From NCBI GenBank assembly GCA_037379345.1, contig CM074516.1, positions 20,460,001 to 20,524,000 of the forward strand: a stretch of DNA of 64,000 nt. Direction: 5' to 3'. Shown here piece by piece: positions 7,845 to 49,201 of the stretch (the first letter of the stretch is position 1; each line of letters starts with the position of its first letter). The stretch comes from Perna viridis. Taxonomy: Eukaryota. The notes below the pieces were generated by a model. It ran no database searches. It worked only from the letters and a program-made list of their open reading frames with translations, and had not been told where the DNA came from. The translations under genes were made by a program, and so were the position numbers.

Positions 7845-8160
7845 ATTATGCGATAATTATGTGGTAATTATATGACAATCATGTTGTAATTAAATGACAA
7901 TTATATGGATATCATATAACAGTCATACGGTAATCATGTAAAAATCATATGATATTCATATGACAATCATAAGGTAATAATAAAACAATCATATGGTAAT
8001 CATGTGACAATAATATGATAATTTACATATAATAGTCATATGATTATTATATAATTCTCATATGTTAATTTTGGAATAGAAGTATATGATGTTCATGCAA
8101 TAATCATACAATCGTTTCATATAATTACTGTATGTTCCAAACCATATGATTCTCATGTAT
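7845..8160. repeat. Degenerate minisatellite of ~10-11-bp units (aatcatatga(c)/ggt)
   Basis: Repeated caatcat, atatga and ggtaat units. Confidence 0.7.
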
Positions 8161-8806
8161 GACGATTAGGCTGAATATACAACACAATAGACATAACTAT
8201 ATTTTTTACAGGATATAAGATTATTTTTTGCGATATGGATTCTCCTAGAAAAAATGCATTTTCAAAAGTATTGAATTTTGTTCATTTTTACTTCATGAAT
8301 TTTATCCCATCATATTCTAAACCAATTTCAGACTACTGGATACCTCAATAGCTATTACACGAGATTACTTTATAATTAGATTTATTTTATTAGAAGATTC
8401 ACGATGTATCAAATAATACGATTTGTATATCGTTTATGAATTGCTATGATAACATGAATTACAAAAAAAATCATTGAAATTTGTAATTAGCTGTTTTAAA
8501 ATTTTGTTAATAACTATTTGCCTCCAGCATTCAAAATAATGGTTTGCAAATACAGTTTTGTATTTCCGATGCTTATGTCATCAAAATAATGAACAGTAGA
8601 ATATTTACATGTTAATAGTAGCAACAAGAATCAATACTCACCTTGAAATCAATAGCAGGTGGAATTAAGCAATCGTCTGTCAGGACAGCTAATAGCACGT
8701 GAGATCCGGAATAGAGAACTATCTTCTGCCCGGAGTGAGTCTTCGAAATAGACATGGATAAATGAATTTTCAATAGGATGAAGGAATATTATAAATCAAA
8801 AGAAAA

Positions 8807-8870
8807 ATGAAGAAGTTTCGATATATTTTATTCTTATTTGTTTTTATACTAGAGTCATGTTTTAATTTAG
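8807..8870 (+). CDS. Coding exon 1 (signal peptide) of a predicted 72-aa type I membrane microprotein
   Basis: ATG at 8807 reads MKKFRYILFLFVFILESCFNL plus 1 nt: basic n-region, then hydrophobic h-region. It ends at a consensus donor TAG|GTAAGT (GT at 8871), phase 1. Confidence 0.7.
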
Positions 8871-10109
8871 GTAAGTTTTTTGTACTTTTGAAAAGTTAAT
8901 TTATTGACATTTTGTAGATTTAGTCATTTTAAATGTATATATAATTAGTTGATTTTAATATGCTCTACTGTTTCCTGGCCGTTATTTTTAACCTCGAAAT
9001 GATTTTTTGTAAATTTTCGGGTTTTTTTTATATTCAGAAGTAGAAAGTATACGATGTAATGAAAGTATGACCGTAACTTCTAAATTGGAGTCGACGGTGT
9101 TGTTTAATTATTGGCATATCCGAATAAAACCTACATTTGTTAATGTTATTCTTTTAAAAATCAAAATTATTAAAAAAAAAAAAAAAAAAAATACTAGTGT
9201 CGGATAAATATATTAATTTAAAGGTTTTGTATTATTTTTTATTATAATGTTCTTGGTTTGAGATATATATTATAATGATCTCTTTTAATTAATACGTTCA
9301 ACTTAGAAAAATAAGGGCATAGTTTTCATAGACGTCGTAAGCGCATTAGACTGTCCTGGGAAGTTGTCATATAGACCTTTATGTTCGAAACATTACTCCC
9401 TCTGTCAATCTATAGCAGGCGTCAAAAGGTTAATTTAAAAACTATGTTCAACAACAATGTAAATTAGCTGATATTTGAAAAAAATGAAAATCTATACCTA
9501 CGGGAAACTTTATCATTTGTTCATTCTACTCTACAAAGCAAGATTCCTATCGATTTTTTAGCTTTCCCAGTGTTGTAAAATTTCAATGTACTATTACATT
9601 AAGGCTTTTCCTGGGTTGTTGGAATGCACTTAGTTTAATTTAGGTAGATAACATGATCTATAGTAATTAAAGCATATAAAATTTATTTCGAAGGTTCTTG
9701 CATAATACTTAAAGTAAGTTCATATGATATTGAGGAAGGGCGCTACATGGAAGAGAATTAAATTTGGTAAAAGCTAAGTACATTACATAATGTAGGCCCC
9801 ATAAATAATTTGTAATAGGACGGAAAGCGATTCCGGTTAGTAATTTCGTGACAAACCGGACCAACTCCTGATCTTATAATGGTTAGTCCATACTGTTTTG
9901 AAACTATAGTACCATTGGGAGCGTTCCATGTGTCTTTTATTGAGTACAGATGCGATTTTGTTTAAAATGAGAAGAGCAGTTGAAAACTTTTTATAAAATA
10001 TTTGAATGTACATTAAGGTTTATAACAAAGTAAACGTCCTATAAAATGTCAGAACTGTATAGAAATAGACGAAAAGAAAAGTCTGTACAACAAATAGCAA
10101 TATCAAGAC

Positions 10110-10765
10110 AAAAACCGGAAAGTTGAAAACAACTGCATTGGTCCTTATTTTGTACAGGCATTTCCTGAGTATGTCATTTGTGTATTGAAAGAAATTGTTG
10201 AACTCTAAATAAAACTATCTAAGTATTGTCAAATCAAGTATGTCGTTTGCAGCACAGGAAGCGATGATACCTAATTTCAATTTCAATGTAAGTGGCATTA
10301 TCTCGTTCTCGTCATTTATTTCTCGAAAACATTCCATCTATACATGTATGTTGTTGTCATAGTTTTGTTACCAGGACGTTATTTGCAGAAGTAAGGAGTT
10401 TCAGATAATGTTGTTCGGTGTAAACAAACCGTTGCATTCTTGAACTTTGGACCGAGAGATTTTTTGTATTCATTTTCAAATTTATTAAGGTACAACCTAC
10501 TTGCAGGAGACGAAGATATTTTAATGGAATATGATGAATTGCTTCATTAGCATTGTAACGTTGAAATAAAAATATCTTTATTTGTTATATAATAAAAACT
10601 AACTTTTGTATGAGACAAATTGCCGATACATTTATACTTACACGTATACGGATTCTACCGACTATGACCGGTGGCAGTTTTATCCACCCCCACCCCCCCC
10701 CCACTTTATCGGAAATGCCTGTACCAAAATTAGGATCATTGTGGTGGTTTACAACTTCCGGTTTT
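10110..10765. repeat. Inverted pair of a dispersed repeat fragment (10110-10167 -, 10711-10765 +)
   Basis: ggaaatgcctgtac(c)aaaat(t/a)agga...caact(t)tccggtttt is present in both orientations. Confidence 0.7.
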
Positions 10766-12066
10766 ATACTGCGATTTGTTATACGGACTATCCATTTGGT
10801 TATTTTTGTTGGCTATTGTCTAGAGTTTGTCAATACGGTAATTTTGTTATCCATCATGAAGGCTCAAAAGTAAAATTTAGATTGTTAATAAGATCAGTAT
10901 TCCTGTAAAATCACTGAAAATTCATAAAATTAAAGGTTGAAATATAACCGACTTTATACGTAATGATACTTGAAAATAAATCCTACGCCAATAAAGCAAA
11001 ATGACCATTAAACATATCGAAATATACGACAAGTATAATTATATAACTAGGGACTCTACCTTTTTTTTGACTGATTTTTAAGGTATGTTTATTTGGTTAT
11101 TATTTTTCCACAGTGGTCAAGGGGGGTGACGCCAAAGTACTTTAACCCGCCCCATTTTTTAAGCCCGTCCCAAGAAAGACATTTCTTGCTCTTGTATGTT
11201 TTGTTTTGTTTTCACTTTAAGTTAACATTATTTTGATGGAGTAACTTTAATAACAGTCCGAAAAATAAATCTTTTTTATATTAAACTGAAAAAAAGGCAT
11301 TATCATTTTTAGAAATATAAATATTTTCAGCTTCGTCCTCTTACAGGTTCAACCTACCTCTTATCATTAAATAATTTTAAACCTGACTTGAGCAAACCAG
11401 TTGCAATATATTTGATATATAATGTAACAAATACCGACATTCTTCATTTTCTTAGAAAATACAAATCTTTAAAGATTAAAGTTAAGTATACAATAAGAAA
11501 ATGCCGTGTTACTTCGGTGAAAAGGCAAGAATGAAAGGATTTTAAAAAAAAAATAATTAAAACTTTAGAAATAAGAAACCTGTTTGAAAAGTTGTTGAAC
11601 TTGTCGATCAGTGTAAAAAAAAGTACAAAGATACTTTTTATTACTGGTAAATACTGACTATGTTGAGTATTTTACGTTATTATCTCAACATCTTAAACTG
11701 TCGACGAATTTTAAAATTTAAATATTTTAATGTACATCGAAAGTCCTGTGAACACTTCACCTTGCTATCATTTCCACAAAAATTATATGTGCGTTGTGAC
11801 GTCAGACAAGGAGTGGAACGTCTTTAATTTTACAAAATCTTTTTTTTTTCAAATATATACTTTTGAAACATTATTAACACAAGTGTATAAATGGCGAGGT
11901 GAAGAGGTAGTTTGGACTAGTGTTTTTAGGAAGAAAACATTTACGGGAAACAGAGGTATTTGCCAAGACCGAAGAAATTCTTACTAGTGAAAAATAATAA
12001 TGAACCCAACAACAAATATGCAATTCGAAGTCTATAAACGAGCAGTATAGTTTTTTTCTTCTTATT

Positions 12067-12265
12067 TTACCCTACCGGTGCACCTGATCCATGCTCCCAG
12101 TTTTTAGTGGAGTCCGAGGTGCTCATTTGCTTTTGTTACTTTGTATGTATGATTTTAGTTACTGTATGTTCTTTGTTGAGTATGTCTGTTTTCCATGTCT
12201 GGTCTTTGTACCTGGATTACATTCTTTTGATTAACGCTATAACCTTGGTTCCCTTGATTACTCTT
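12067..12265 (+). mobile_element. Naiad-type PLE 3'-end fragment
   Basis: ttaccctaccggtgcacctg...ccttgattactctt. Confidence 0.9.
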
Positions 12266-12280
12266 GGACTTTTTAACTGA

Positions 12281-12480
12281 AAACACATTTGTACAGTTTG
12301 GTAGATTAGTTTGTCTCAACACAACAAGTAGTGGGAATCTCGATGGGCACCGATTGTGCGCCTCCACTTGAGGATCTATACCTACACTCCTACTAGACAG
12401 ACTTCATAAAAAATAACTCTAACAAAACAAAATTGGCAGAATCCTTTGACTTGCATCAATGTTGCTATCTCTCTAAATAA
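12281..12480 (+). pseudogene. Decayed PLE RT fragment, more diverged than the main family
   Basis: Reads NTFVQFG...QQVVGISMGTDCAPPLEDLYLHSY*TDFIK, homologous to RT motif B of the 18963-19760 ORF. Confidence 0.75.
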
Positions 12481-13811
12481 ATCATTGATCTCAAATATTA
12501 CTCTGCTAAGAAGCGCTGTTGAAAGAAATACTGACAACAAGAGATTTTAGAATATGTCTGAGAGTTTAACATTAATTCTAATATTCAATAAATTGAATAC
12601 ATGTTCGGACACCCCTCAGAGATAATTTTTTTTTATCACAATGCATGTTCCTTTTTTAACAATAAATAAGGTATTTGATTTAGAAAAATTAAAGCCAATG
12701 AATATAATGACATCGTCTGTCTCACATCAGTAGTTGGTCATCTGGTCCTCAGTCTGGTTTTTCGTCACCATTAGATTATTACCCCTGATTTTACCTATCA
12801 GGAAAAGTAAAGTGTATTCCTTATTTTTAAATTCATTAGATGATTTTTATTATTCTCATCATATTTCAAAACATCTTAGTATCAATTCAATTCAAATTCC
12901 AAACAAACAACGTTTTCAAAGTTTAATTAAGTACATACTGGTATTCCAAAGACAATAGATGAATAAGTGATTGGTATTGAACCATGACCCGTAAGAAAGT
13001 TCATAGCATTGCTTTCATGAATAATTGAATATACAATCTAGAAATGCCTAAATACTTAAGGATGATTGATATTTCAATTAACTCTGTTATTTATGTGCAT
13101 TTCGAAGTATGGGTTGATAAAAGTCCAACAACGCTCCAATGACACCTGCATAAATGACCCTTAGTGTAAACGACCACTTGTGTAAACGACCACCTGGTAA
13201 ACGACCAATGCAATCAGCAATAACCTAACTTAAAAGACTATGATATAAATATCATTGAAAAATGAATACTATGTACAAAAATGTAAAATTAAACTATTTA
13301 AAAAACTGGTTGTCCTATATTGCTCTCCATTGCAGGTCATTTAAGACAGGTTTGAAAGTATCAAACCTTTTTGGTTTTGCGGTGGTTTCCAACTTTTCGA
13401 TCTTTACCCTGATATTGTCATTTCTTTTACAGACTTTTCTTCTGACTATTCCCCATGAACATTGCTTACATTTTCTAGTTCGATAATTTTGATATTATCC
13501 TTCATTTTAAAGACGACACCAACATTTTTCTATTATTTATTAGTATTTATTATTTTTGTCAAAACTGGAAAAAAGAAGATTCGTCTGTAATTGCTATTTT
13601 GGTCACTTAAATTGTGTATGGCGTGTGCAACACCATGGATTTTTGTTTTAGTTTATTTCAGAAAAGTACGAGTGTATTGATGTTACTACACATGTCCTTA
13701 AATAAAGGATGCAAGGATGATAACGATTGTGGAATTTTTACTAAGTAACTGCAAATTACACCCTGTCCCATAGCTTTACATATTGATTGAGAAGTTTCTG
13801 TTTTATTATAG

Positions 13812-13840
13812 GGCGATGTTCAAGTACAGATGCACCACAG
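13812..13840 (+). CDS. Coding exon 2 (29-nt microexon, GRCSSTDAPQ) of the predicted microprotein
   Basis: Acceptor ttctgttttattatag| and donor CAG|GTGAGA. The 29-nt length converts phase 1 to phase 0, exactly what is needed to join exon 1 to exon 3 without a stop. Confidence 0.65.
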
Positions 13841-13953
13841 GTGAGAGGATAAAATTGTTTCAAATGCATGTTTATCTGTATTTCTTCTTCTTTTTCAGTT
13901 TTTTATATGCTTTTTCTTGCTATTTGTTGTTGTTTTATTATTTGTTTGCTAAA

Positions 13954-13984
<31 letters not shown>

Positions 13985-15965
13985 TATTTATTTTGTTTTT
14001 ATTGATTGGTAAAATATAATATGAGTTTGCAAGCTCTTTTTAAAAGTATGGTCATCTGTTTGTTGAAGACGTTAGTTCACGTATTCAAATAATGATCATG
14101 CATTCCAAGTGTGATAATGAAAGTAAGAAATTAAACTGGGAAATTTAAAATCAATATTATTTTTCTTTGACGATTACATAATTATTTGCTGAGTGATACT
14201 ACCAGAACATTTAAAAAGTTAAAAGTAAGAAGTGTAGTCGCTATTGTATTCAGTGTATTTTTATTTGTCTTCAATAATATCGTTTTATGTTTTTTTGAAT
14301 TATGAAAAGCCAATATAATTAACAATAACTAAGGAATAATAGCACCTTTATAAAATATCGAATTCTCGAATACAAAGTCGCGTTGAAAAATGCATGAGAC
14401 GATTGCAATAAAAAATAGATTATAAAACAACACTAATGATGTGTCGCATTTAAGACTGAAAACTACAGCATATTTGTCCAGAGGTAGTACCTTAAATCAA
14501 AAGTATGACAATAGGCTATAAGGAGTGTTTTTTTTTCAGAGTCTGCTTAAGCACTTCCAAAATCTGAAATACAGATTTAAAATACCACAAAAACTAGTGC
14601 TAATGTCCTTGTTTTGTATGAAAGATCTCATTACCTAAAGTAGTTTGTTAATTTCAACAATCGTTGATTTTAACTTGAACACACAAGTAGTCAATTCCAT
14701 TTCCGATTAAGACGGCAATTCATGCTACTTCTTCAGTTACGTATTGATTATACCATCAATGTGACTTATTCTTTTGTAATTTATTTGATTGAGAGGGATT
14801 TTACAAGGTATGTTTGTGTAACGCTAAGGAAATGGCAAAAGCAACCAATGTTAGTTATCGCAATTCAGAATCTTGCACGAACAATAAAAAGCTCGAATCG
14901 ATCACAAAGTATAGTATTAACAAAACCTGTAATTGAAGACAATTTATACGAACTACACTTGTATCTATTTTCATGAAACCTTTGGCAATTATAGGCAAAA
15001 CTAAATAAGTGGAAGTCAATACGAACTCATTTATGCCAAATTATAGCCTTTGTTTAAGGATATTTTTAACCTATATATTTGTCAGTGTAGACAGGTCAAA
15101 CCTGCACTGTCAACTATGTCACAAGTCAATTTTTTTCAACTGTATATCAAGACAATCATGTTTTCATGTGTGATACTGAAACATCAAATTGTTTAAAATG
15201 AATCACAATTTATCGGCAACTTTATCGTTTTTTTTTCTATTGTTTTTACCGCCTGATACTTTCTATCGCTTTACCAAAATGTATCGGCAAATTCCAATAA
15301 CAACATTATGTCAAAGCAAGTGACGTCACCAATAAACATAATAAAGCCAGTTTTGAATGTATCTATAAAACGTCATATCTATCCCTATCGGCCTCACTGT
15401 GATATTTTCTGTCTTGACTTTCGTCTTTATTCTGTATCATGAATGAATCCAGTAAAATTGGTAAAATGTGTTCGACACTGTATTCTGTACAAGTAGCCAA
15501 GGTCCTAGAACTTGTAACTGGTCCTATTTATTTTTGTCATAGTTGATTTTCATTTCATGTTTTTCTTTTTTTCTTTCATTTTTCTTTTTTTTTTGGGGGG
15601 GGGTGTTTGGTTTTGTTTGTTTCTTTGTATAAGCCTTATGAAAATTAGGTTTTTACAGACTGTACCTAAAGACGATGCATTTCTTTCATTAATGTTTATT
15701 TGGTGCAATAATTCGCCTTAAAGTATTTTTGTTTAACTTGTTACTAGTCGTTATATTTTTCTTGTTACATTACCATTTTACAGTTAGGTTATTGTGGTCA
15801 ATGAATTTACAATTTTTGTTCAAATTTTCCCTAACACCCTATACCTGTTTGGATTAATAAGTTTTCATTCAGGCTTCATTCCTATCGGACATAAATGATA
15901 AATTGGAAACTGACTGCTTTGTTTCGTCATGTTTCGAATCAGTGTTCATTTGTAAATAACGTTCT

Positions 15966-16133
15966 CCATGAACTCGTGGATCGTTATGGTCATTTACTTT
16001 TGTTACTTTGTATGTATGATTTTAGTTACTTTATGTTCTTTGTTGTGTATGTCTGTTTTTCATGTCTGGTCTTTGTCCCTGGATTACATTCTTTTAATTA
16101 CCGCTATAACCTTGGTTCACTTGAGTACTCTCT
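15966..16133 (+). mobile_element. Naiad-type PLE fragment with a deletion joining the ORF end to the tail
   Basis: catgaactcgtggatcgttatggt (HELVDRYG) is fused directly to catttacttttgttactttg. Confidence 0.88.
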
Positions 16134-17105
16134 CATCCTAAAACGCATGAAATATTTGTCAAAAGACACTTAATAAGAAATTATATGGCTTTTAAAGGAG
16201 AATGATCTCAAAGGCTAAATCACAAAAGTAACGTCCTTGAAGCAATCGACAAAGTATTGATGCCTCTAACATAGGGCATTTAAAAGTACCCTAGCAAATA
16301 ATTTAACCCACCAGAAGCATAACAAATATATTGCTATACTCAAATATACACCTTGGGATTAGTTTATGGATTATCATATATATATATCGCTGACTCATAA
16401 AATGTTCTTAATCAAAACATCCTCAATTATTTATGAAAATTCGGACTTTTTAATAAATCTCTAATTGATTATGTGCCATGAACGGTTCAGTAGAAATCCT
16501 TAGAAGCGATCAGATGGCACATATTTTTACAAATGAATGAGCAAAGGCAGTAATGTGAACTGTGTTGCCGATTTCTGTATAATAACAGGCCATTCATAAT
16601 TAACAATTGTTAGGTAACTAAGGTAAATAGACATTGTTAATCCACAAAATTTAGAATCGGCTTCAACTGAAAATTGCGTTTCTTTCATTTAAATATAATT
16701 AATCAGTTTATGTAATTACAAAAATATTACTCATATTGATATTGTCAATTTCGGTATGCTGCACACGTGTATCGAGGAATACACTATCATCAGCTGGATT
16801 AGATTCAAACAAAATTAGATTTAGATCTTTAGGAAGATCTAAATTCAAAAATAAATCGTACACAAGCAGTACTAAAAACAAAAACAATTGGAAGCCACGA
16901 TACAGCACCTTGACGTTTTACCAATTGCAAAACAAGATTTTATAATAATGCGTTAAAATCTGTGTAATCTATTTCATATCCCATCTGAAAACGAATCAAA
17001 GCACCTAACAACGTCAAGAATAGATGTATATTTACAAAACTGAAATATAAGTCATCAAGTAATTAACACTTCATAAACGTTATTTGATCTAGATCTATCT
17101 TTTAA

Positions 17106-17502
17106 GTAGCAATCCAGCTAAGAATCATGCAAAAATGTGATTCATGGTTGGAAAGCCTACATCTTTTTATTTTTTACATTTTGTTTGAAATATTATGGTA
17201 AACAGAAACTAACATGTGGCTTTTCATCTAACCTTTGTTCACAGGAGACAAAAATTATATAGAATATACTACCGAATTCAAAATTAAGGGAGATAACTCT
17301 GTAAATGACACAAAGATACAATAGAAACTGTTGGATTTTTTTGTGTAGATTATCTACTAAGAGCAGACAGATAGGAATGAATAACAATACATTTCATTAT
17401 ATAGACTTTTAAAACAACTTAATACCAAAAATAAAAATATGTAGGCTTTTTTAGGTGTACTACATTTTACAGAATTTGCCTGATTCTTACAAAGACTGCT
17501 AC
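17106..17502. mobile_element. TTAA-flanked MITE (AAGAATCAGGC TIR group)
   Basis: ttaa|gtagcaatccagctaagaatcatgcaaa ... tttgcctgattcttacaaagactgctac|ttaa. Confidence 0.7.
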
Positions 17503-18685
17503 TTAAGCTTTTCATCAATGGTGCCACAGAAATGAAATACACGGTCGAGATCTAACCCCTTGAACAGAGTGCTAGCGCATTTCAACTTATTCTGCTTTAA
17601 AAGTGGTCTATATTTTTCGTTCATTCCGTATTAAACCCGCCTTTGTCATTCCCAGATTCCCCCATATCGCTATTCCTTTTAATATCCCTATCGCATAATC
17701 AATTATTGGTTTATTCCATAATCAATTAAAACTAATATTTTGAATAATTTAACATGCAAACTTTTCTTTAAATTAAATCAAATATGATTTTGAAATAGAT
17801 GAAAACCTGTAACTCCATTCTCCCGTTCAAAATCCCAATATCTATATACAAAATCTCCATCCCCGTCCCCCCAATGTTCGATTACCTATTTAATATCGAA
17901 TAGATAGGATTAATCAAGTAAAGTTCCGTATTGAAGAATTCGTAGAATCCGTCTTCTATTTGTTTATTTAGCTATCCAAGTACTATCCAAATTACTAACT
18001 CACTTTTGTTTGTTGGCTTGTATTTTCGGGGGGGGGTGTTGTGTGTTTGTATTTGTTTGGTTTTCTTTTTGTTCTTTCTTCATTTTTTTTTGTTTTGGCT
18101 TTTTGGTTTTCTTATTGTTTTGTTTTGGGTTTTTTTTATACTGGTTGGTTTTTGTTTTGTTCTTTATAATATATAATAAAATAAACGAAGTTCCAAAGCA
18201 AAAAAAGCAGATCAGATTCACGGGCCATCTACCAACTTGAAATGTTTAAGAAAGCATATTTAGAAACAAAATATAAAATCAACATTATTACGAAGTAATC
18301 TGCAAGCAAATAGGTCATAAATGCCGATCACATACTTATTGTTAAATCTAATGTCAATAATAATCTTGTTGCTGTTTGTAAAGACCACAACTGTAAAACG
18401 TCGTTATGTCAGTTTAAGTGTGATCGTATTTGCCTTTATTCTCGAAATACTGTCAATCACCGAATAAGGCAAAGATAGTCCTTTAATATACAAATGATTC
18501 CGAAATAAACAAAACTGAAAGAGCTAGAAAATTTAGAAAATCTGTAGTAAATCAATAGTCGATTAGGGTTTCACTACATGAAAAAGAAAATATTAGAAAT
18601 CATCTTGTAGTAAATGTGACGTTCTGTGTTGTTAGAGTCTTAATCCTTAAACATCATTGCTTAAATGTATGACAACAGATCACTT

Positions 18686-20101
18686 AAGAGTGATCAAGAG
18701 AACCAAGGTTTTAGCGGTAATCAAAATAATGTAATCCAGGGACAAAGACCAGACATGGAAAACAGACATACACAACAAAGAACATAAAGTAACTAAAATC
18801 ATACATACAAAGTAACAAAAGCAAATGAGCAACTGACTCCACTAAAAACTGGGAGCATGGACCAGGTGCACCGGTAGGGTAAGCGTCCTCTGCTTTTCTA
18901 GAAACACCCGCCGAGTTGCTCATAAAAAGTCAAGTCCGGGAAGGCAAACGAGGATAGGAAAACTATAACCAGTTGAAAAAATCAGTTTTCATGGTGCAGA
19001 TGGATACACTATAACGATCCACGAGTTCATGATGACGACCATAAAACTTCTGTAGTGATGACTTCAATCTTGTAGCAACATAACCCTGTTCCAGAAGCCT
19101 ATTTGTTAGAGTTCTAGCGCGATACAAAAATTCTGCGTAGTTTCGGCAAGTTCTGGCATAACGTATGAGTTGTGATATGAACACTCCATACGCAGGTGCC
19201 GAAGGGATGTTGCCACAGATGAAAGGAAAGTTGACAATTCTGAATGAAAAGTCATCACGTTTGTCGTAAAATTTTGTCAATAGTTTTCCTCTACCATCGA
19301 TTTCTAAGTGTAGGTCAAGATATGAGGCTGACTTCACATTGTCTGTAGTATCCTTTATCTCAGGTTCTTTTGGGTAGATGCGATGTATCAAATCCCCGAA
19401 ATTAGGATTGTTTAAAGATAATATGTCATCTATATAGTGGAAACTGAGATTGAAGGATCTAGCCAAACGATATTCTTTCTTTCTGATCTCATCAGCTATA
19501 AAGTCAGCCTCATAAGAGTGAAGGAATAGGTCAGCAAGTAAAGGAGCACAATTTGTTCCCATTGGAATGCCGACTGTTTGTTGAAAAACACGTCCACCAC
19601 ACTGGACAAATATGTTGTCGATTAAAAATTCCAGCATTTTGTAAACATCTTCCTCTGTATGTTTGGAAGATGATTTGGAATTATTTGTTACAAAGTATGA
19701 GGAATCTCTACCAAGAACTATATATATGTATCTAGGTGTACCATCTGTTTTGGAAAACAACGAAGTATAATGTTTGTAAGTCTGGAGTTTAACTGAGTAT
19801 GGGGAATAGAAGTATACAGTGTTGAAAAATCATAGGTTTTAATGTTATTATGTTCGGATAATAGTCTTGAACTGATTGTCTCCAAAAGATCTTTCGAATT
19901 TTTCAGGATCCACATTGAATTAATACCACTACGGGAATAACAAGTGTTGTGGTAGGACTGCCGACCCTCTTTGACAGTTGTGAATATAGAAGTTAAAAGT
20001 TTTGAAAGAGGTTTGGTGGTACATTTTGCAGATCCAGCTATGACACGTTGTTTGTATGGATTCTTGTGGAGTTTAGGAATCCAGTACATAGACGGTAAAT
20101 C
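18686..20101 (-). mobile_element. Penelope-like retroelement (Naiad type), 5'-truncated: frameshifted RT plus complete 3' UTR
   Basis: ORFs 19718-20116 and 18963-19760 together give PLE RT motifs YWIPKLHKNP, TYDFSTLYT, QQTVGIPMGTNCAPLLADLFL, YIDD, YLDL and YDKRDDF. The ORF stops after the thumb region with no C-terminal GIY-YIG. Confidence 0.9.
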
Positions 20102-20250
20102 ATTTAAACAATGCAATTATAATATACTTAAATTAACCTTTTTAGTAAATATTGTATCTGATGATCATATACAAAAAACTAGTGACTCAAACGGCTGCAT
20201 ATTCATTGCGTAATATTTTAATCGAAACACTTCTTCGACGTAAGTGTTAA

Positions 20251-20551
20251 TAGTCAGTTTCTGTAAGAACCAGGCAGAGGATTAAACATGGTATGAACCA
20301 ATCTGACAGTGTACTTTTACTATACGCACCATCGTTTTAGTAAATTGAATTATTGCATTACAGGGGCCCATAACTCTGTCAAAAATCTAAATTTCCTAAC
20401 TTTTTATTGAAAAATTGCTGAAAAAATAGGGTGAGATATATCCATTCTTCAAATGGAGGTCATCCTTGAGTAAAGTTATATTGTCAGATCGGTGGGCCGT
20501 GACATGCATGTTCTTTTTCCCACTTTGCCTGATTCTTACAAAAACTTACAC
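20251..20551. mobile_element. TTAA-flanked MITE (AAGAATCAGGC TIR group)
   Basis: ttaa|tagtcagtttctgtaagaaccaggca ... tgcctgattcttacaaaaacttacac|ttaa; interior homologous to 51177-51560. Confidence 0.78.
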
Positions 20552-21220
20552 TTAAGTTTTAGGTAATACCTCCTGAATCATGTACGCTGTGTTATGGTTT
20601 TATCGAAAAACCACATCAGGGAGCTTCTTGTAAAACTTTAGTGACTTCCTCGTACAATTTTTCGAAAGATGCATCATACAATTCAGTGCTCTTTTATGAA
20701 GGTAAAAAACAAGAAATAATTATTAGCTTTTCGTGTTAACTCGTCATTGTAATTCACCGAACATTGAAAGGCGATTCAATAATGACTAAGAAATTCCTGT
20801 TGATAAACAAGCCACATCCAGCTCACGCTAGAAAGCACTAATCTCATAATTAACATGTTTTCAATAACGGAAGTTAAATTGATCTAGTCAGGTGATATGA
20901 GTATAAATTTTAGCACCTCTAATTTCCTATTTATGATATGTTCATAGAGTCATGACAGATATCCTGTTCGGAAGCAAAGTAGTAGTAATAGTGCTCTTTG
21001 GGGGCTGAAAGTTAATAGTATAGCACCAAGTATAGGAAAAATAAACTATTAATATCTGTATTTTTTAAATAAAACAAACACCAAATAGACCATAGTATAA
21101 ATTTTAAAACGAACATAAGTTTATTTCATATGTAAAGTTATGTCTTTGATAACATTACTTTAATACAAGTATAAACATGCAATTTAACAATTATACGAGG
21201 TAAAACAGATTTGTTTTAAC

Positions 21221-21470
21221 TTAGTAGGGACGGAGCGTCAGCGACGTCCTACATACATACATACATACATGCATATCCTTCTGTCGGAAATGACGTATTT
21301 CGGAAGTGACGTATGCAGTTAGGATCAAAATTGTGCAAACTTTTAACGTAGGCGCACACCACGTGTTTTAGGAAGTATAGCATATTCCAATACATCAGCG
21401 ATATCACAACAAATCAGTACATTATTTCAGTACAAAAAGCTCCGTCCTTCATAGGCAAAGCCTAAAGTCA
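21221..21470 (+). mobile_element. Helentron-associated (HINE/DINE-like) non-autonomous element
   Basis: Subterminal inverted repeat ggacggagc (21228) / gctccgtcc (21439), 5' internal inverted repeat gtagg..cgtcctac, (TACA)n microsatellite, 3' hairpin taggcaaagccta. Confidence 0.65.
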
Positions 21471-21825
21471 TAAAAAATCATAATAGGTTACTATCACACA
21501 AAAACATGTTGTATTAATTAACACCATAATATTGAATACAGGAAACTTCTCGACTTCAGCTTGCAGCATTTTGATAATAGTACAGTAGGGTAAATTTAAA
21601 TGCAAATGAAAGACGTCATTTACAAAAAAATTGAACCAAAATCTTGAATATTAGGCTTTGCTTTACACCATAAGGGTTATTGTAGGTATATTGGGGAATT
21701 TTCCCAGAATATCATTTCACAATGTATGAGCAGAACTTATTGTGTAAAAAATAAAAATGTTGTGGAATAGTCTTTTAAGAATAAATAAGCCTAGCATGAT
21801 AATTATTCAAATATTAATTGCAAAC

Positions 21826-23031
21826 ATGTGGTCCTCCCGGTCACGTTGCTACGGGAGATTTTACTATCATCAAAAATAAATCTCTTCATAGGTCATTCCT
21901 AAAGGTCCCAAGTACCGTGAACCACGCCCCATAAATTGGAACTATAACTTTAAAGTTCCTATGGATGCCATGGAGGACTACGCAAAAATGAATAGAACAA
22001 GAAAATATTGATTCTCTGTCAGAGTGCGTAAAACCTGTGAGGTATTCAGTTTTGAAACGTATGAAAGTTTTAAGTAGGGCAATGAGTTTCAATACTACAT
22101 CAGTTTTCAGAGTCCCCGATGTAGAAAAAACACTGTCTTTTGTACATGCCAAATATGTTACCGTTCCAGTAGACAAAGCCAAAGTCTGCAAAACGCATCA
22201 CATCCAATGTTTATTATCAGAGGTAGACGCAGAACAAAATAGCAGTAATAAGACATATACTGCTATCACACTCTCTAAAGAAGTGATAGTGGGAAAACAC
22301 CAATCTATGCTATCTTCTTTGGTTTCTTTATGATTGTGATCTACCGTCTATGTTCCGGATTCCTAAACTCCACAAGAATCCATACAAACAACTTCACTCT
22401 TATGAGGTTGATTTTAAAGCTGATCTGATCCAAAAGAAGGAACATCGTTAAGCTAAATCCTTTAATCTCAGTTTGACCAAACTACACGACAAACGCGATA
22501 ATTTTTCATTCCGTATTGTCAACTTTCCTTTTATCTGTGGAAACATCCCTTCAGCACCTATATGCGAAGTTTTCATATCACAACTCATACGTTATGCCAG
22601 AGTTTGCTGTAAATACGCAGACTTTTTGTATCGGGCTAGATTTCTGATAATAAAGCTTCTGGGACAGGTTTATGTTGCTTCAAGACTGTAGTCATCACTG
22701 CAGAAGTTTTATGATCGTCATAGTGAACTCGTGGATTGTAACGGTGTATATATTTGCACCATGAAAACAGATTTGTTATAGTTTTTTTTTCTCTTTCGTC
22801 TACTCTAGACTTGACTTTTTGTGAGCAACTCGGCGGATGTTTCTAGAAAAGCTGAGGACGATTACCCAACCGGTGCACCTGGTCCATGCTCCCAGTCTTT
22901 TGTAGAGTCCGGTTGCCATTTTACGTGAGTTGCTGTGTATGTATTATTTTGGTCATTTTCTGTACTTTTTTGTGTGTGTCTGTTTCCATATCTGGTCTTT
23001 GTCTCTGAATTACATTTTCTTGATTTTCTTG
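21826..23031 (+). mobile_element. Decayed Naiad-type PLE copy with internal deletions
   Basis: Translatable remnants GHVATGDF, KGPKYREP, YVTVPVDKA, IPKLHKNP and HDKRDNFSFRIVNFPF, followed by the family 3' UTR. Many stops and frameshifts. Confidence 0.85.
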
Positions 23032-24458
23032 AACCATAAGCCGAAGAAGGATTTTCGGGGACGAACCGCTGATAATTAAGTACCCACATCAGCAAGATTT
23101 CTAAAACTTGAGTCAGATGTTTGACTAAAAAGGGAATTTCTGGGGAATTGTTCACTTCAAATTAAAACAGGTCCTTTGGCTTTAATGGACATTGTAGGTA
23201 GTCAGTATTGAGTTCAGATACACTATTCACAACATAATACAAACGTTTCTAATTGTCATGCGAGCTTAGTGATATGGTGACAAGCGACGACGATTATTAC
23301 AGTAATATGTTCCTTTTATTTCATCTATGAATGTTTGTTTATGCATTTGTAGCTTGTAATTCATTAATGTTAATCAAGCTCGGTAGTTTTGACATCTAAC
23401 GTAAAACAGAAGTTTTTTAATGCTAACTATCAGTGTCAGCTCGTCACCTTCAGGAACATATAGAAATGTTCCTTAATTAAATTCACAATGGTTTAACCTT
23501 TTTATCTTTCTCTTCGTAATACCAATGAAACTCGCAGATATCCATCCATGATATCTACATATAATATTAACTGTTGTTCAAGGACATTTGGTCTGGGTAT
23601 TTGGCATTGTCTTATTCAGAGAGTTACTAATACCAAGAACCGATCATGCTTTGTTATTGCCTCATGCGATGACTATTCACTATTAAAGGAAATACCTGAA
23701 AGAGATGACGCCTAGCATTTAATACTTTGTTGTCGATCAAGATTGTGATTTACCTTATTTTGATTACTACAACATTCATATAAAGAGTTTAACTTGAAAA
23801 TTTTCAATAGTTTTTTTTTTCAATTCTTTTCTTCACCTGCTAGCAACTTACCTCTAGTTCAACCTTGATTGATTATCGTTCTTTATCTGATATCTTTCCC
23901 GCGGAAGAGATTTATGCAAACGAAGAAAATGAACGATTAACTTATTCGTCTAATACTATTCTTGTATAAAGCTTGTTAAAATGGAAGGGAAATCATACTG
24001 CCTTATTTTGATAAATTTTGCATTGTTAAGACATTTGCTAACATTTGCCCCAAGCAGCATTTGGCCAAACAAATAAAAGTCTTGTTTCCTAGCCCAAGCA
24101 AGTAAAATACGGGTAGGTAGGTAGAGAAATTATTATATTTTTTTTCAAAAACGTGTTTACATTGACTTAATGTGGAAACATTCGTGACATTAACTGTGGC
24201 TAATCAAAATGGTTATAAAATGTTTAGGGTATGCACACAAGATAGGGTAGGTAGGATAGCACGAAATAGACATACTTTTTTGCCATTGTGATTCTTGAAA
24301 ATACAAGCATTTAAAGGAGTTATATTGTTATGGTATGTGAGTACTAGTATTATAATTTGGATGATATCGCCGTTAAAAATTCATTTCGCCAACATGGGAA
24401 TAAATTGTAGACGTTGACGTGACGGTAAATATTGATACACAATACTTATTTATTGCAG

Positions 24459-24584
24459 GAAGAAGAGGATTTTGTGAAGTCTGAAAAATTCGTTGGATTG
24501 ATGATAGGCCTGGGATCCTTTGCAGGATTGTTAGTCTTATGCTGCATCTTTTGGAAATGCTGCTGTGGAGGCAAACCAGAATAA
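24459..24584 (+). CDS. Coding exon 3 (transmembrane helix and Cys-rich tail) of the predicted microprotein
   Basis: Acceptor cttatttattgcag|. Phase 0 reads EEEDFVKSEKFVGLMIGLGSFAGLLVLCCIFWKCCCGGKPE*, with a ~22-aa hydrophobic helix. AATAAA occurs at 24610, 25147 and 25164. Confidence 0.75.
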   Translation, partial: EEEDFVKSEKFVGLMIGLGSFAGLLVLCCIFWKCCCGGKPE

Positions 24585-25270
24585 TACGAATGATATCAAA
24601 TAGAACATAAATAAAACTCCAGTATTCAGTGCATCTTTGTGAAATGTGACATAATATTGCACGGCTTCCTAACCTATTTCATTTAACCCTTCGTTGTTAC
24701 TGTCTACTGTCAATATTTTTATCTCTAGTTTTTCATCGATTCAACTATCATCTATGATGTCTGCTAGTTTTAGATGAAGTTTAACTTGAATACAATTTAG
24801 AAAGCCTTAACTTGTATGTGTCGCTTACGTGTTGAACGATATTTAATGCAAGAGAGGGTAAATGTTTGGATTCTTTTTGAATGGAAGAGATGGCTTATTT
24901 GTCTTCAATTTTGTTGCGTATCTTGACATTTCATTTAGTTTCAGACACTGAATGTTTAAGCTTTGTGGCTTTGTACATACTTGTAAAACCATTGAATTTT
25001 CCGTCCACAAACATGTTTTCTTTCCTCCTTGATGATGTCCTATAATATAGATTGTTTAATTCACTTTTTTCTTGTGTTTGATTTTTTTCAACCTTGACCA
25101 GATAGGCAAGCACTATACGCGGCAATATTTATATTTGTGAAATGAAAATAAATACTCAAAACCAATAAACAAATTGAAATGAAAAAAAAACATTCACAGC
25201 AAATATCAAATAAAAAAGCTCAAAACCACAGTAATCAGAGTAACAACTTACAGAAGAATGAACAAACTAA

Positions 25271-25531
25271 CCCGGACTTGGTTTTTTTATGAGCAGCTCG
25301 GCGGGTGTTACTAGAAAAACAGAGGATGATCACCCTACCGGTGAACCTGGTCCATGCTCCCAGTTTTTAGTGGAGTCCGAGTTGCTTATTTACTTTTGTT
25401 ACTTTGTGTGTATTTTTTAGTTACTTTATGTTCTTTATTGCGCTTGTTTGTTTTCCATGTCAGGTCTTTGTCCCTGGATTACAATCTTTTGATTATCGCG
25501 CTAGAATCTTGGTTTCCTTGATTACTCTTTC
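25271..25531 (+). mobile_element. Naiad-type PLE 3'-end fragment containing the full structured element
   Basis: cccggacttg...atgagcagctcggcgggtg...ccgagttgcttat...gattactcttt. Confidence 0.9.
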
Positions 25532-25914
25532 GTTATTGTGATGATCAGGAGGTTGTTCAATCAAAACAACTTGGAGACGAGGTATTTCTCAGCTATATTA
25601 CGGAAATTTCAATGCTAACCGATCATTTTATCTTTACATGCAAACTTCCCGCTCTCATACTAGTAAAATTAGTACACGTAGAGCACATGTGCATGGTATT
25701 TAAGAGGTATATTTGTATCTCGAATGACTGTTCTATGGCACCTTTTTGCTACATTAGGTGGTTTAGTAGTATAATATGCAAATCATATACGAATGTACAG
25801 TACTGAAATCACGAGTGCAAGAAGTCACTTACACTATTAGCGACTCTAAAAATATACAAGTGCTGACAATATGAAAGGTGACATGAATTTATACTTTTTC
25901 GGAAGCGTTTCATG

Positions 25915-26092
25915 TACTGTAAACCTACTTTTGTTCGCGGTGTACTAATTTTCGCTATTTACGCGAAATTGATTTTTAACACTATATAACGCTTATCATT
26001 TTTTGAAACCGCGAAAATTGATACCGGCGAATATGTTCGCTTGACAGAATTCGCGAAAATTAGCAACTGCGAAAATAAATACGTTTACAGTA
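25915..26092. mobile_element. TA-flanked MITE (Tc1/mariner-like) with repeated CGCGAAAAT motifs
   Basis: tactgtaaac ... gtttacagta termini, with inverted ttcgc/gcgaa subterminal motifs. Confidence 0.75.
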
Positions 26093-47431: not shown

Positions 47432-49201
47432 ATGTCGGCTAGTTCGTATTCGTCTATTTCGACGACCCATGGGGCCTGTAGAACAGAGTTCAAGCGACAG
47501 AAGACCTACTTATCAATGGAAAAACAGTATATATTTGACAATGAATCTGCAGACCCTATACCGATTGTTGAGTTAAAACCGTTTGTTAAAAAAGTATGGA
47601 GAAGGGAGAAGAGCCTTCCGGCATTTTACGACATGCTACCGCCGTCAAAGCCATTATCAAATAGGAGAAAACGGGAAAAGACTGAGGTTTACAATTCTCC
47701 TGAACCAGCTCCGGAAAAAATTGACTTAGTCGTAGGAAACAGTCCCAGTGAACCAAAGCAAGAGAGATCTAAACATAACAGTGGACACTTGTCACCGAGA
47801 TGTAAATCTAAAAACCATATTCATCCTCAAGCTGAAACTATAACCGTTAAACAAATAGAACATTCTCAAAGTCTGGTTCCTGGATTTATAACTCGAGATG
47901 AGAGAAGTAAAACAACTCTTATGGAAATCCAGCATTCTGATAGTCCAACAAAGCAACACACTGCTTTGCAGTCCTGTCTGGAGCGGAAGGAGATAGAAGA
48001 ACCGGGGATGTATATTAATCTTAGAGGAGATAGCTTCAAGCCGAACGGATCAGTACGACGTCCTCTCAGTTATTTTGTTCCTTACAGAAATTCAATGAAG
48101 AAGAATGGCATGTGGCAGCAGCTACAGAGCATGGAAAGCCTACCGAATTATATTTCTCGTCATGTAATGACACAAAGCCCCCAGTCAGATTTAACTACTC
48201 GCTCTTCATCGCCGTATTACGATTCCTTTGACAAAAAGGGAACTTTGCCTTCAATTAAAATTTCTTATTCCAACTTGGCTAAAAGAAATAACAAACAAAG
48301 AGTTGCCTTTGAGGATTTAGAGGGTATGAATGAATCGTATTCTCCATATCATCAAATCAGCAAAATCAACAATGCTCTTCATCATTTAAGTAAGTTCGGT
48401 GTAGCATCAAAAGTTGAACACCAGCTAACATACCAGCTAAAGATCGATTTACAAAAGTTCAAGAGGTCTAGAGACTACTTTCCGTTTGATATATCACCCA
48501 GTGAATTAGCCAAATATTATCCACCGCCGTCTATCAATCTAACGAATGGCGAACTGCAAATTAGGAAAGCTCAGCAAATGAATACACCGAAAAAGAGACG
48601 CAAAACAAGAGAAAAATCTCAGGTATCTTTTCAATCAACCCCAGAAAAGTTGGAGATGCAAGACTGGGGTCCGAGTAGGTCTGAGGACGACAGATTCATA
48701 GATACTAGAAATACAAGAAACTTAGAAAGTGCATTAGAAAATATTGCCGAGAGTGAATCCGAAGAGGAACTGAAAATCAAAAGTAACGATATCACAGTGC
48801 CAAGTCAGTTTGACAATGCTACTAATACGCAAGAAAGTGAAGGGGTAACCCCAGCAGTTAACGACTCAAGCACAGGATTTACGCAAAAGAAACCGACGAC
48901 AACAATCGACATCGGTCTAGAGTCGACATTTCAATCAAATGTGGCCGAGCCGTCGTCACAGGAACCGGAAATGGATAGCGTTGAGGAAAAACGAAGTGCT
49001 AAATCTCCTAGAACCTCAGATATTATTTCGGGCGTTAGGGATGCTAACATTTCATACTTGAACGCAAGCGATATTCAAAAGGAGAGTGAAATTAGAGAAT
49101 CTACGAAAGAAAATATTGATAAATTAGAACGGGATAGTACTTTTCTTACGTCTGATCTTAACACTGAGTATGGAAATCCGGATTTATCTGTCGGGAGTTG
49201 A
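47432..49201 (+). CDS. Uncharacterised intronless 589-aa protein, Ser/Glu/Lys-rich and probably largely disordered, with NLS-like basic clusters
   Basis: A 1770-nt uninterrupted ORF in AT-rich DNA, GC-richer than its flanks. Basic clusters NRRKREK and PKKRRKTREK; acidic C-terminal third. No transposase, RT or other domain recognised. Confidence 0.85.
   Translation: MSASSYSSISTTHGACRTEFKRQKTYLSMEKQYIFDNESADPIPIVELKPFVKKVWRREKSLPAFYDMLPPSKPLSNRRKREKTEVYNSPEPAPEKIDLVVGNSPSEPKQERSKHNSGHLSPRCKSKNHIHPQAETITVKQIEHSQSLVPGFITRDERSKTTLMEIQHSDSPTKQHTALQSCLERKEIEEPGMYINLRGDSFKPNGSVRRPLSYFVPYRNSMKKNGMWQQLQSMESLPNYISRHVMTQSPQSDLTTRSSSPYYDSFDKKGTLPSIKISYSNLAKRNNKQRVAFEDLEGMNESYSPYHQISKINNALHHLSKFGVASKVEHQLTYQLKIDLQKFKRSRDYFPFDISPSELAKYYPPPSINLTNGELQIRKAQQMNTPKKRRKTREKSQVSFQSTPEKLEMQDWGPSRSEDDRFIDTRNTRNLESALENIAESESEEELKIKSNDITVPSQFDNATNTQESEGVTPAVNDSSTGFTQKKPTTTIDIGLESTFQSNVAEPSSQEPEMDSVEEKRSAKSPRTSDIISGVRDANISYLNASDIQKESEIRESTKENIDKLERDSTFLTSDLNTEYGNPDLSVGS

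What the first reader, a model, noticed from the sequence alone, without database searches (positions are those of the whole stretch)
8807..24584. Hidden 72-aa single-pass membrane microprotein gene spread over 15.8 kb, with a 29-nt microexon
Seen: three exons with consensus GT-AG sites and matching phases give MKKFRYILFLFVFILESCFNLGRCSSTDAPQEEEDFVKSEKFVGLMIGLGSFAGLLVLCCIFWKCCCGGKPE. It has a signal peptide, a ~17-aa acidic ectodomain, a TM helix with two GxxxG motifs (GLMIG, GSFAG) and five juxtamembrane cysteines (CC..KCCC). None of this appears in the ORF track. Established: clustered juxtamembrane cysteines are typical palmitoylation sites, and GxxxG mediates helix packing. Inference: the architecture resembles small pump or channel regulators such as FXYD proteins, but there is no PFxYD motif, so it may be an undescribed molluscan regulatory microprotein.
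Basis: partly seen in the sequence, partly recalled or inferred. Interest (0 to 1): 0.75.

Follow-up and report, generated by a model that had tools for sequence, protein, structure and literature searches.

The report
Conserved bivalve membrane microprotein gene, confirmed
The three tiny exons spread over 15.8 kb are a real, spliced and expressed gene for a 72-residue membrane-anchored protein that belongs to an unnamed family shared by distant bivalves, and whose job is still unknown.

Summary
Observation confirmed. The three exons (8807-8870, 13812-13840, 24459-24584), their GT-AG sites and their phases read exactly as described. Transcript-sized contigs from 4 of 4 runs laid (4 studies) carry the joint 8870^13812. 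In 2 of those 4, the letters after 13840 are the start of exon 3. Introns are almost uncovered. A 73-aa contiguous ORF from another organism (P0001) matches all three exons in order. Exon 3 alone finds 7 relatives, three of them unnamed "hypothetical proteins" of Mya arenaria, Dreissena polymorpha and Sinanodonta woodiana. They share [P/D]FxxSxxF[IV]GLxxGxG...LCCxxWKCxCGG. No Pfam, PDB, Rfam or paper match was found. FXYD membership fails on the motif and on the profile. Best reading: a signal-peptide-bearing type I microprotein with a short Ser/Thr-rich stalk, a glycine-rich transmembrane helix and a cysteine cluster that is probably palmitoylated. It probably acts inside the membrane as an accessory subunit; this part is inferred, not shown. 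The joined peptide was never searched. dN/dS could not be computed.

The parts
8663..8806 (+). 5' untranslated part of exon 1 (minimum extent). It holds three short upstream ORFs: 8754-8765 MDK*, 8762-8776 MNFQ*, and 8778-8810, a 10-codon ORF whose TGA overlaps the main ATG.
   Evidence: The contigs end at 8665, 8663, 8692 and 8727 with no letters beyond (table 8). uORFs. Contigs cannot show a true start.
8807..8870 (+). Coding part of exon 1: 21 codons plus 1 base. It encodes the signal-peptide-like N-terminus MKKFRYILFLFVFILESCFNL.
   Evidence: 17 of 21 residues are identical to P0001. The model of the orthologue has a helix at 2-23.
8871..13811 (+). Intron 1 (4941 nt, GT..AG). It contains a dispersed repeat at about 12067-12266.
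   Evidence: Skipped in 4 of 4 runs (table 5). Repeat.
13812..13840 (+). 29-nt microexon. It completes the Gly codon and encodes RCSSTDAPQ, the likely signal-peptide cleavage region plus a Ser/Thr stalk.
   Evidence: 4 of 7 aligned residues are identical to P0001.
13841..24458 (+). Intron 2 (10618 nt, GT..AG). It contains decayed reverse-transcriptase ORFs on the minus strand (18963-20116).
   Evidence: The letters after 13840 in X1 and X6 equal 24460 onward. ORFs. RVT_1 E=0.0051, below the cut-off.
24459..24584 (+). Coding part of exon 3: an acidic juxtamembrane piece, a membrane helix with GLMIG and GSFAG, CC..WKCCCGG, and the stop TAA.
   Evidence: 35 of 41 residues identical to P0001. 11 of 41 columns invariant in 7 sequences. 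Single copy in the genome.
24585..25374 (+). 3' untranslated region (minimum extent, inferred). It runs into a dispersed repeat at about 25300-25520.
   Evidence: If colinear, the contig lengths reach 25361, 25374, 25069 and 25040. 14 transcript-sized runs hold 62-87% of the words of 24300-25300. The X2 contig's far end also fits the intron-1 copy of the repeat (joint 13841->12069). Repeat alignment.

Best explanation
Shown: this is a genuine three-exon protein-coding gene. Exon 1 spans about 8663-8870, exon 2 spans 13812-13840, and exon 3 runs from 24459 to at least about 25374. Its spliced mRNA carries a 72-codon ORF. It belongs to a family of small proteins that has no name and no Pfam model and is found in distantly related bivalves.

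Read from the sequence: the protein has an N-terminal signal-peptide-like helix and a short Ser/Thr- and acid-rich outside stalk of about 18 residues. It then has a conserved juxtamembrane motif [P/D]FxxSxxF, one glycine-rich membrane helix (GLxxGxGxxxG), and a stub of about 9 residues inside the cell. Five cysteines sit at the inner membrane edge (LCCxxWKCCCGG).

Inferred mechanism (my odds about 0.4-0.45). After signal-peptide cleavage, the roughly 50-residue mature protein sits as a type I anchor and is S-palmitoylated on the cysteine cluster. It then works inside the bilayer by packing its glycine-rich helix against a conserved multi-pass partner such as a pump, channel, transporter or receptor, in the way FXYD, phospholamban or KCNE-type accessory subunits do. 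The reason is that nearly all conservation lies in and next to the membrane helix, while the tail is too short to signal and the stalk too short and variable to fold.

The confidence given below is for the shown part, a real, conserved membrane-microprotein gene.
For: - Splice junction 8870^13812 is present in 4 of 4 runs from 4 studies. The letters after 13840 equal exon 3 in 2 of 4 runs. Introns are about uncovered.
- Exon 3 is single copy in the 723-Mb assembly, so no retrocopy there explains the joined form.
- 14 transcript-sized runs from 6 studies hold 62-87% of the words of the exon 3 and 3'UTR stretch.
- P0001, a 73-aa contiguous ORF seen on 12 contigs of another organism, matches exon 1 (17/21), exon 2 (4/7 aligned) and exon 3 (35/41) in order, with the 20 residues FVGLMIGLGSFAGLLVLCCI unchanged.
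- Exon 3 alone finds 7 proteins at E 5e-8 to 2e-4 among 1.84 billion representatives.
- The family profile scores the members at 1e-15 to 3e-32 (the 27-aa fragment at 5e-6). Three are hypothetical proteins of Mya arenaria, Dreissena polymorpha and Sinanodonta woodiana.
- 11 of 41 exon-3 columns are invariant in 7 sequences, and all lie between F5 and C36.
- Hydropathy shows two peaks. AlphaFold gives helices 2-23 and 41-68 with a disordered linker in the orthologue.
- An in-frame stop at 8792 and the TAA at 24582 bound the ORF inside the transcript.
Against: - The runs are labelled RNA only by guess.
- Contigs cannot give levels, starts or ends.
- Three further runs of the same species label hold next to none of the words.
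- Three upstream ATGs precede the start codon, one in a good context (GACatgG), which could damp translation.
- There is no proteomic or ribosome evidence.
- No nucleotide orthologue could be fetched, so there is no dN/dS.
- For the mechanism, no partner is known and no sequence link to any accessory-subunit family was found.
- The invariant residues are spread all round the helix (resultant 0.2) rather than on one face. This fits several interfaces or self-association as well as a single partner.
- Palmitoylation is inferred only from the position of the cysteines.
Confidence: 0.88

Rival explanations
1. Self-associating palmitoylated helix. The protein has no foreign partner. It forms homo-oligomers through its two overlapping GxxxG motifs and organises ordered lipid patches or a small pore.
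For: GLMIG and GSFAG are offset by two residues, and the invariant residues are spread round the helix (resultant 0.2), as expected for more than one interface. There are five cysteines at the inner leaflet. One relative gives a weak, sub-threshold hit to the reovirus p10 fusion protein, which is of similar build (E 0.1).
Against: No tool here tests oligomerisation. The p10 hit is in 1 of 7 members and below the cut-off. The conserved outside motif [P/D]FxxSxxF is not explained by lipid ordering alone.
Confidence: 0.2
2. Miniature mucin-type surface glycoprotein. The function lies in the O-glycosylated Ser/Thr stalk (coat, anti-adhesion or receptor), and the helix is only an anchor.
For: Ser/Thr/Pro-rich stretches follow the signal peptide in the 5 relatives whose N-terminus is long enough to show it. 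The protein atlas lists glycophorin-like and other small type I proteins as look-alikes, all under 0.9.
Against: The stalk is the least conserved part, and only about 10-20 residues long. The helix and cysteine cluster are the most conserved, the opposite of what a mere anchor shows. No match to Glycophorin_A or any other Pfam family.
Confidence: 0.12
3. A true but very divergent FXYD relative that regulates the Na,K-ATPase.
For: Same overall build: signal peptide, short outside piece with a PF dipeptide in 5 of 7 sequences, one glycine-containing helix, and cysteines just inside. That FXYD1 is palmitoylated on such cysteines is recalled knowledge, not a call.
Against: PFxYD is absent from 7 of 7 sequences. 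PF02038 does not appear for any member at E<=10. It does not hit this locus in the genome at E<=10 among 22 scored candidates. No FXYD chain appears in the PDB profile search at E<=10. The spacing between PF and the helix differs from my recalled FXYD signature.
Confidence: 0.06
4. Non-coding or accidental: a spliced transcript whose 72-codon ORF is chance, or part of a longer protein with more exons.
For: The ORF is short relative to a transcript of at least 1.1 kb. There are three upstream ATGs. This genome's own 72-aa protein is not in the 5.8-billion-protein collection.
Against: The ORF is kept end to end in P0001, with the same start (MKKFRYIL) and a stop 1 residue later. The motif is kept in named bivalves of different orders. 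An in-frame stop lies 15 nt upstream of the ATG in the same exon. The contigs carry no extra exon between the three (with the length arithmetic).
Confidence: 0.04

Closest known systems
Unnamed bivalve proteins: Mya arenaria MAR_018575 (P0005), Dreissena polymorpha DPMN_044582 (P0006), Sinanodonta woodiana ACJMK2_028578 (P0007), and the unnamed P0001, P0002, P0004
   Same: They share the signal peptide, the Ser/Thr stalk, the [P/D]FxxSxxF[IV]GLxxGxG helix and LCCxxWKCxCGG. Exon 3 gives E 5e-8 to 3e-5 against them, and the profile gives 1e-15 to 3e-32.
   Different: Only 33-60% identical to P0002. Some database models carry longer N- or C-terminal extensions (101 and 134 aa) that may be prediction artefacts. 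This lineage has DF where the others have PF. None has a tested function.
FXYD proteins (Pfam PF02038; phospholemman, Na,K-ATPase gamma subunit)
   Same: Small type I single-pass proteins with a short outside piece, glycines in the helix and cysteines just inside the membrane. It works like these only by analogy of build.
   Different: No PFxYD motif, no profile match and no PDB match. The tail is far shorter and lacks a basic or phosphorylatable region. No partner is shown.
Glycophorin-type and small sialomucin-type anchors, and vertebrate small integral membrane proteins (TMEM213, SMIM3, SMIM9)
   Same: Signal peptide, Ser/Thr stalk, one helix with GxxxG. Listed as feature look-alikes at 0.75-0.83.
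   Different: All atlas scores are under 0.9, which the tool calls leads only. No Pfam match. Those families lack the CCxxWKCCC cluster, as far as I recall.
Other type I membrane genes of the same genome with a similar helix-plus-cysteine exon (C2:22335725, C11:698120, C11:30177825, C11:30186103, C5:35911053)
   Same: A GLxxGF helix followed by CC(C)xW[KR]xxC, each directly after a splice-acceptor-like site.
   Different: Weak matches only (E 5e-6 to 0.01). They have long tails of 45-100 residues in the same open frame and lack the [P/D]FxxS motif. They are probably other genes, and the likeness may come from composition alone.

Membership tests
Unnamed bivalve microprotein family (MAR_018575 / DPMN_044582 / ACJMK2_028578 type) | Significant sequence match over the juxtamembrane motif, helix and cysteine cluster | tested here: met
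   Exon 3 alone gives 7 hits at E<=1e-3 among 1.84 billion representatives. The profile finds 7 of 5776 candidates at E<=0.01. 11 columns are invariant.
Unnamed bivalve microprotein family | Same order of parts: N-terminal hydrophobic signal, Ser/Thr linker, one membrane helix, short Cys-rich end | tested here: met
   Two hydropathy peaks in 4 of 7 relatives scanned. P0004 and P0008 start too late to have the first peak, and P0006 falls below the threshold. Alignment. The model of P0001 has helices 2-23 and 41-68. Window exons 1 and 3 carry the two hydrophobic pieces.
FXYD (PF02038) | PFxYD signature before the helix | tested here: not met
   Columns 4-9 read [P/D]-F-x-x-[S/T]-x in 7 of 7 sequences, with no Y-D. 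The wording of the signature is recalled.
FXYD (PF02038) | Match to the family profile | tested here: not met
   Not listed for any of the 7 members at E<=10 (HMMER filters drop most hits above 0.1). The genome-wide search with PF02038 gave 18 matches at E<=10, none at this locus and none over the cut-off. No FXYD chain in the PDB profile search at E<=10.
FXYD (PF02038) | Binds and tunes the Na,K-ATPase | not testable with these tools
   Needs co-purification and pump kinetics.
Glycophorin A (PF01102), TMEM213 (PF15192), SMIM3 (PF17307), SMIM9, DAP10 (PF07213) | Match to the family profile | tested here: not met
   Raised only as atlas look-alikes at 0.75-0.83. None is listed by hmmscan for the 7 members at E<=10.
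S-palmitoylated membrane proteins (a functional class, not a family) | Cysteines within a few residues of the cytosolic end of the helix | tested here: met
   C28, C29, C34, C35 and C36 of exon 3 flank W32-K33. C29 and C36 are invariant, and C28 and C34 are kept in 6 of 7. Actual acylation was not tested.

The most novel reading that the evidence does not exclude
This bivalve family is the lophotrochozoan counterpart of the vertebrate FXYD or phospholamban-type regulators. On this reading it arose independently as a palmitoylated single-helix subunit that tunes an ion pump or channel. It would give molluscs, which face large salinity swings, a so far unknown layer of ion-transport control. Its glycine-rich helix, invariant on all sides, would be the docking surface.
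Probability: 0.12. Interest if true: 0.7.

Novelty: new variant of a known kind. Interest (0 to 1): 0.4.

Why it matters
Three things follow.

First, a gene with 64-, 29- and 126-nt coding exons spread over 15.8 kb can be read from raw sequence and then proven. This genome's own protein is absent from a 5.8-billion-protein collection, so such genes are probably still being missed in mollusc annotations.

Second, the finding defines a small protein family whose membrane helix is almost frozen across distant bivalves. That is a strong sign of a specific partner inside the membrane.

Third, it makes that partner findable. The protein is short, easy to tag, has clear mutational handles (Gly faces, Cys cluster) and is expressed at a level that assembles in many transcriptomes.

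Even so, it remains one more uncharacterised small membrane protein. Relatives are already deposited as hypothetical proteins, and nothing here points to a new principle.

Tried and rejected
- **Own-genome search with exon 3 and with the family profile.** The locus is single copy. The five other hits are weak helix-plus-cysteine exons of other genes, so I did not count them as paralogues.
- **Pfam.** I scanned exon 3, P0001 and six relatives, then all 7 alignment members at E<=10. Eight families were each hit by 1 of 7 members, all below their cut-offs (DUF5665, DUF2189, SPC12, Orthoreo_P10, PUNUT, DUF6336, MASE8, Mid2). I rejected these as hydrophobic noise.
- **PDB profile search at E<=10.** Only Serinc3 appeared, at E 1 and 4.9. 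Rejected.
- **PF02038 over the whole genome.** The best hit, C13:16633847-16633951, scored 24 bits against a cut-off of 26.9. I fetched and translated it. It has no hydrophobic helix after the motif-like piece, so I take it for chance.
- **Protein atlas with P0002 and P0001.** The best scores were 0.86 and 0.83, so these are leads only.
- **Rfam on 8000-26000.** 0 matches.
- **Nucleotide orthologue for dN/dS.** The JGI metagenome scan with the exon-3 open frame matched 504 pattern stretches, but none was confirmed. A degenerate DNA pattern for CCxxWKCCCGG found 1 contig, L011. It is GC-rich with a stop right before the match and has no blastn likeness to the window, so it is chance. dN/dS was therefore not computed.
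- **Papers.**
  - FXYD in invertebrates. I read the single FXYD passage in PMC6267510, which describes the gamma subunit in general, and in PMC6114146, where it is only a reference-list entry. Neither speaks of mollusc FXYD.
  - The three locus tags and three motif strings gave 0 papers.
  - Microprotein/smORF with bivalve terms: of 10 listed titles and abstract starts, none concerns this family (listing only).
  - Supplementary files were not consulted and are closed. A transcript or proteome table there could list relatives.
- **Fold search.** I did not run one on the model (pLDDT 68.2, two lone helices), because it would be meaningless.
- **Joined peptide.** P0001, a natural full-length relative returned by a tool, served instead.


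Full report
**1. What is in the sequence**

The window is AT-rich (GC 32.8%) and has no N. It is G000:C6:20460001-20524000 of a 723-Mb assembly in 46 contigs.

- The ATG is at 8807, preceded by an in-frame stop at 8792.
- Exon 1's coding part is 64 nt and ends at TAG|GTAAGT.
- The 29-nt piece 13812-13840 sits between TTTTATTATAG| and |GTGAGA.
- The last piece starts after TTATTGCAG| at 24459 and ends with TAA at 24582-24584.
- 64+29 = 93 nt, so exon 3 opens in phase 0.
- Read apart, the exons give MKKFRYILFLFVFILESCFNL, (G)RCSSTDAPQ and EEEDFVKSEKFVGLMIGLGSFAGLLVLCCIFWKCCCGGKPE.

The ORF lister shows only two ORFs of 150 aa or more in the whole window, neither of them here. Exon 3 appears only as a 50-aa TTG-started frame. 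The gene is indeed invisible to an ORF track.

**2. Is it transcribed and spliced that way?**

The look-up of sequencing runs, given 24300-25300, listed 23 runs, of which 20 hold at least half of the words.

- Fourteen (X1-X14, 6 studies) are transcriptome-sized (56-101 million letters of contigs) and hold 62-87% of the words. The tool labels them "RNA?", a guess.
- X15-X17 are far larger (658-934 million letters), about genome size for this assembly. X18-X20 are small (95-102 million letters). All six carry the kind '?'.
- X21-X23 (one sample) hold next to none.

The results were:

- In 4 of 4 runs (X1, X2, X6, X8, from four studies) one contig (1138, 1153, 819 and 755 nt; word depth 18-70) carries the joint 8867->13809 'GT..AG (cut +3)'. 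That is 8870^13812.
- At 13841 the onward letters listed for X1 and X6 are a 30-mer that occurs once in the window, at 24460. Base 13841 is G, like 24459, so the joint is 13840^24459.
- For X2 the same contig is instead listed with a 'goes back' joint 13841->12069. I read this as the contig's far end lying in a repeat that has a second copy in intron 1 (see section 3).
- For X8 no loose end at 13841 is among the rows shown (84 rows were not shown).
- Intron bins are at or near zero depth apart from that repeat, which is what RNA gives.

Exon 3 is single copy in the assembly, so a processed copy in this assembly cannot explain the joined form.

**3. Transcript ends (inferred)**

The four contigs stop at 8665, 8663, 8692 and 8727 with no further letters. 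This gives a 5' UTR of at least 144 nt.

The 5' UTR holds three upstream ATGs: MDK*, MNFQ*, and a 10-codon ORF whose TGA overlaps the main ATG.

By length arithmetic the contigs would reach 25361, 25374, 25069 and 25040 if colinear. This fits the 62-87% word share.

At about 25300-25520 lies a dispersed repeat that also sits, on the same strand, at about 12067-12290 in intron 1. In the RNA contigs that repeat has depths of 16,000-160,000. I did not test that identity.

Contigs tend to break at such repeats, so the true 3' end is open.

**4. Is the ORF conserved?**

The 51-codon open frame around exon 3 found one protein, P0001 (73 aa, unnamed source, 12 contigs, longest 1587 nt). P0001 is a contiguous ORF that matches all three exons in order:

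- exon 1: 17 of 21 residues identical;
- exon 2: 4 of 7 aligned residues identical;
- exon 3: 35 of 41 identical, with 20 helix residues unchanged;
- one extra residue lies at the exon 2/3 boundary.

A contiguous ORF over what are 5- and 10.6-kb introns here means a spliced message in that organism too. Searching with P0001 found only itself.

Exon 3 alone, scored against 1.84 billion representatives, gave 7 proteins at E 4.8e-8 to 2.1e-4. The profile of 7 sequences (A2) recovered 7 of 5776 candidates at E<=0.01. Three of them have names: hypothetical proteins of Mya arenaria, Dreissena polymorpha and Sinanodonta woodiana.

This genome's own 72-aa protein is not in that collection.

Eleven of 41 exon-3 columns are invariant in the 7 sequences: F5, F11, G13, L14, G17, G19, L27, C29, W32, K33 and C36. 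All lie in or next to the helix, and they are spread round it (resultant 0.2). The stalk and the last five residues vary.

A nucleotide orthologue could not be had, so there is no dN/dS.

**5. Build of the protein**

Hydropathy shows an N-terminal peak and a stronger second peak. AlphaFold2 on the orthologue with the 6-row alignment gives helices 2-23 and 41-68 and a disordered linker, at modest confidence (pLDDT 68.2, pTM 0.38).

The N-terminus looks like a signal peptide rather than a second span. It has MKKFR, about 10-13 hydrophobic residues and a small-residue site. This is inference, since no SignalP was available.

The linker is Ser/Thr/Pro-rich in the relatives, so O-glycans are plausible. 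Five cysteines flank W-K at the inner end of the helix. By general knowledge this is the usual place for S-palmitoylation.

**6. What it is not**

- No Pfam family reaches its cut-off for exon 3, P0001 or six relatives.
- The PDB profile search at E<=10 lists only Serinc3, at E of 1 or more.
- PF02038 (FXYD) does not hit the members or this locus.
- The PFxYD motif is missing in 7 of 7 sequences.
- The atlas look-alikes (TMEM213, SMIM3, SMIM9, glycophorin, DAP10) score 0.75-0.86, below the tool's 0.9 line.
- Rfam finds nothing in 8000-26000.
- Searches of 8.4 million papers for the three locus tags and three motif strings found none.

**7. How it most likely works**

Shown: the gene, the splicing, the conservation and the build.

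Inferred: the helix is far better kept than a mere anchor needs, the tail is about 9 residues long, and the stalk is short and variable. The function should therefore be exerted in the membrane.

I put about 0.4-0.45 on a palmitoylated accessory subunit packed against a conserved multi-pass partner. I put about 0.2 on self-association, about 0.12 on a mini-mucin role, about 0.06 on true FXYD kinship and about 0.04 on no coding function.

**8. Verdict**

The family is real, bivalve-wide on present evidence, unnamed and untested. It is a new family within a known kind of protein and is of moderate interest.

Noticed in passing
window 12067-12290 (+) and 25300-25520 (+): Two same-strand copies of a dispersed repeat about 200-250 nt long, one in intron 1 and one at the end of the 3' UTR (alignment A3). 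In the RNA-like contigs its summed depth is 16,000-160,000.
   Followed up: partly
window 18963-20116 (-): Overlapping 265-aa and 132-aa ORFs in intron 2 with a weak reverse-transcriptase match (RVT_1 E 0.0051, below the cut-off) and a YIDD-type motif in the translation. This is a decayed retroelement.
   Followed up: partly
window 47432-49201 (+): The longest ORF of the window (589 aa, ATG start) has no Pfam match at E<=1. It was not examined further.
   Followed up: no
window 8754-8810 (+): Three upstream ORFs in the 5' UTR of the microprotein mRNA. The stop of the last one overlaps the main start codon (ATGA), an arrangement that suggests translational control by re-initiation.
   Followed up: partly
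G000:C11:30177825-30177956 (-) and C11:30186103-30186210 (-) (L007, L009); also L005, L006, L008: Other exons of this genome encode a GLxxGF helix followed by CCCxWKxxC and a longer tail. Two of them lie 8 kb apart with near-identical tails, so they are a tandem pair. A wider set of type I proteins may share this helix-plus-cysteine exon.
   Followed up: partly
G000:C13:16633847-16633951 (-) (L010): The best genome-wide match to the FXYD profile (24 bits, cut-off 26.9). Its translation has a DFYY..VRVGG piece but no hydrophobic helix after it, so it is probably chance.
   Followed up: yes
runs X21-X23: Three transcriptome-sized runs of one sample with the same species label hold next to none of the words of the exon 3 stretch. 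Expression may therefore be tissue- or stage-limited. The tool warns that this is no proof of absence.
   Followed up: no
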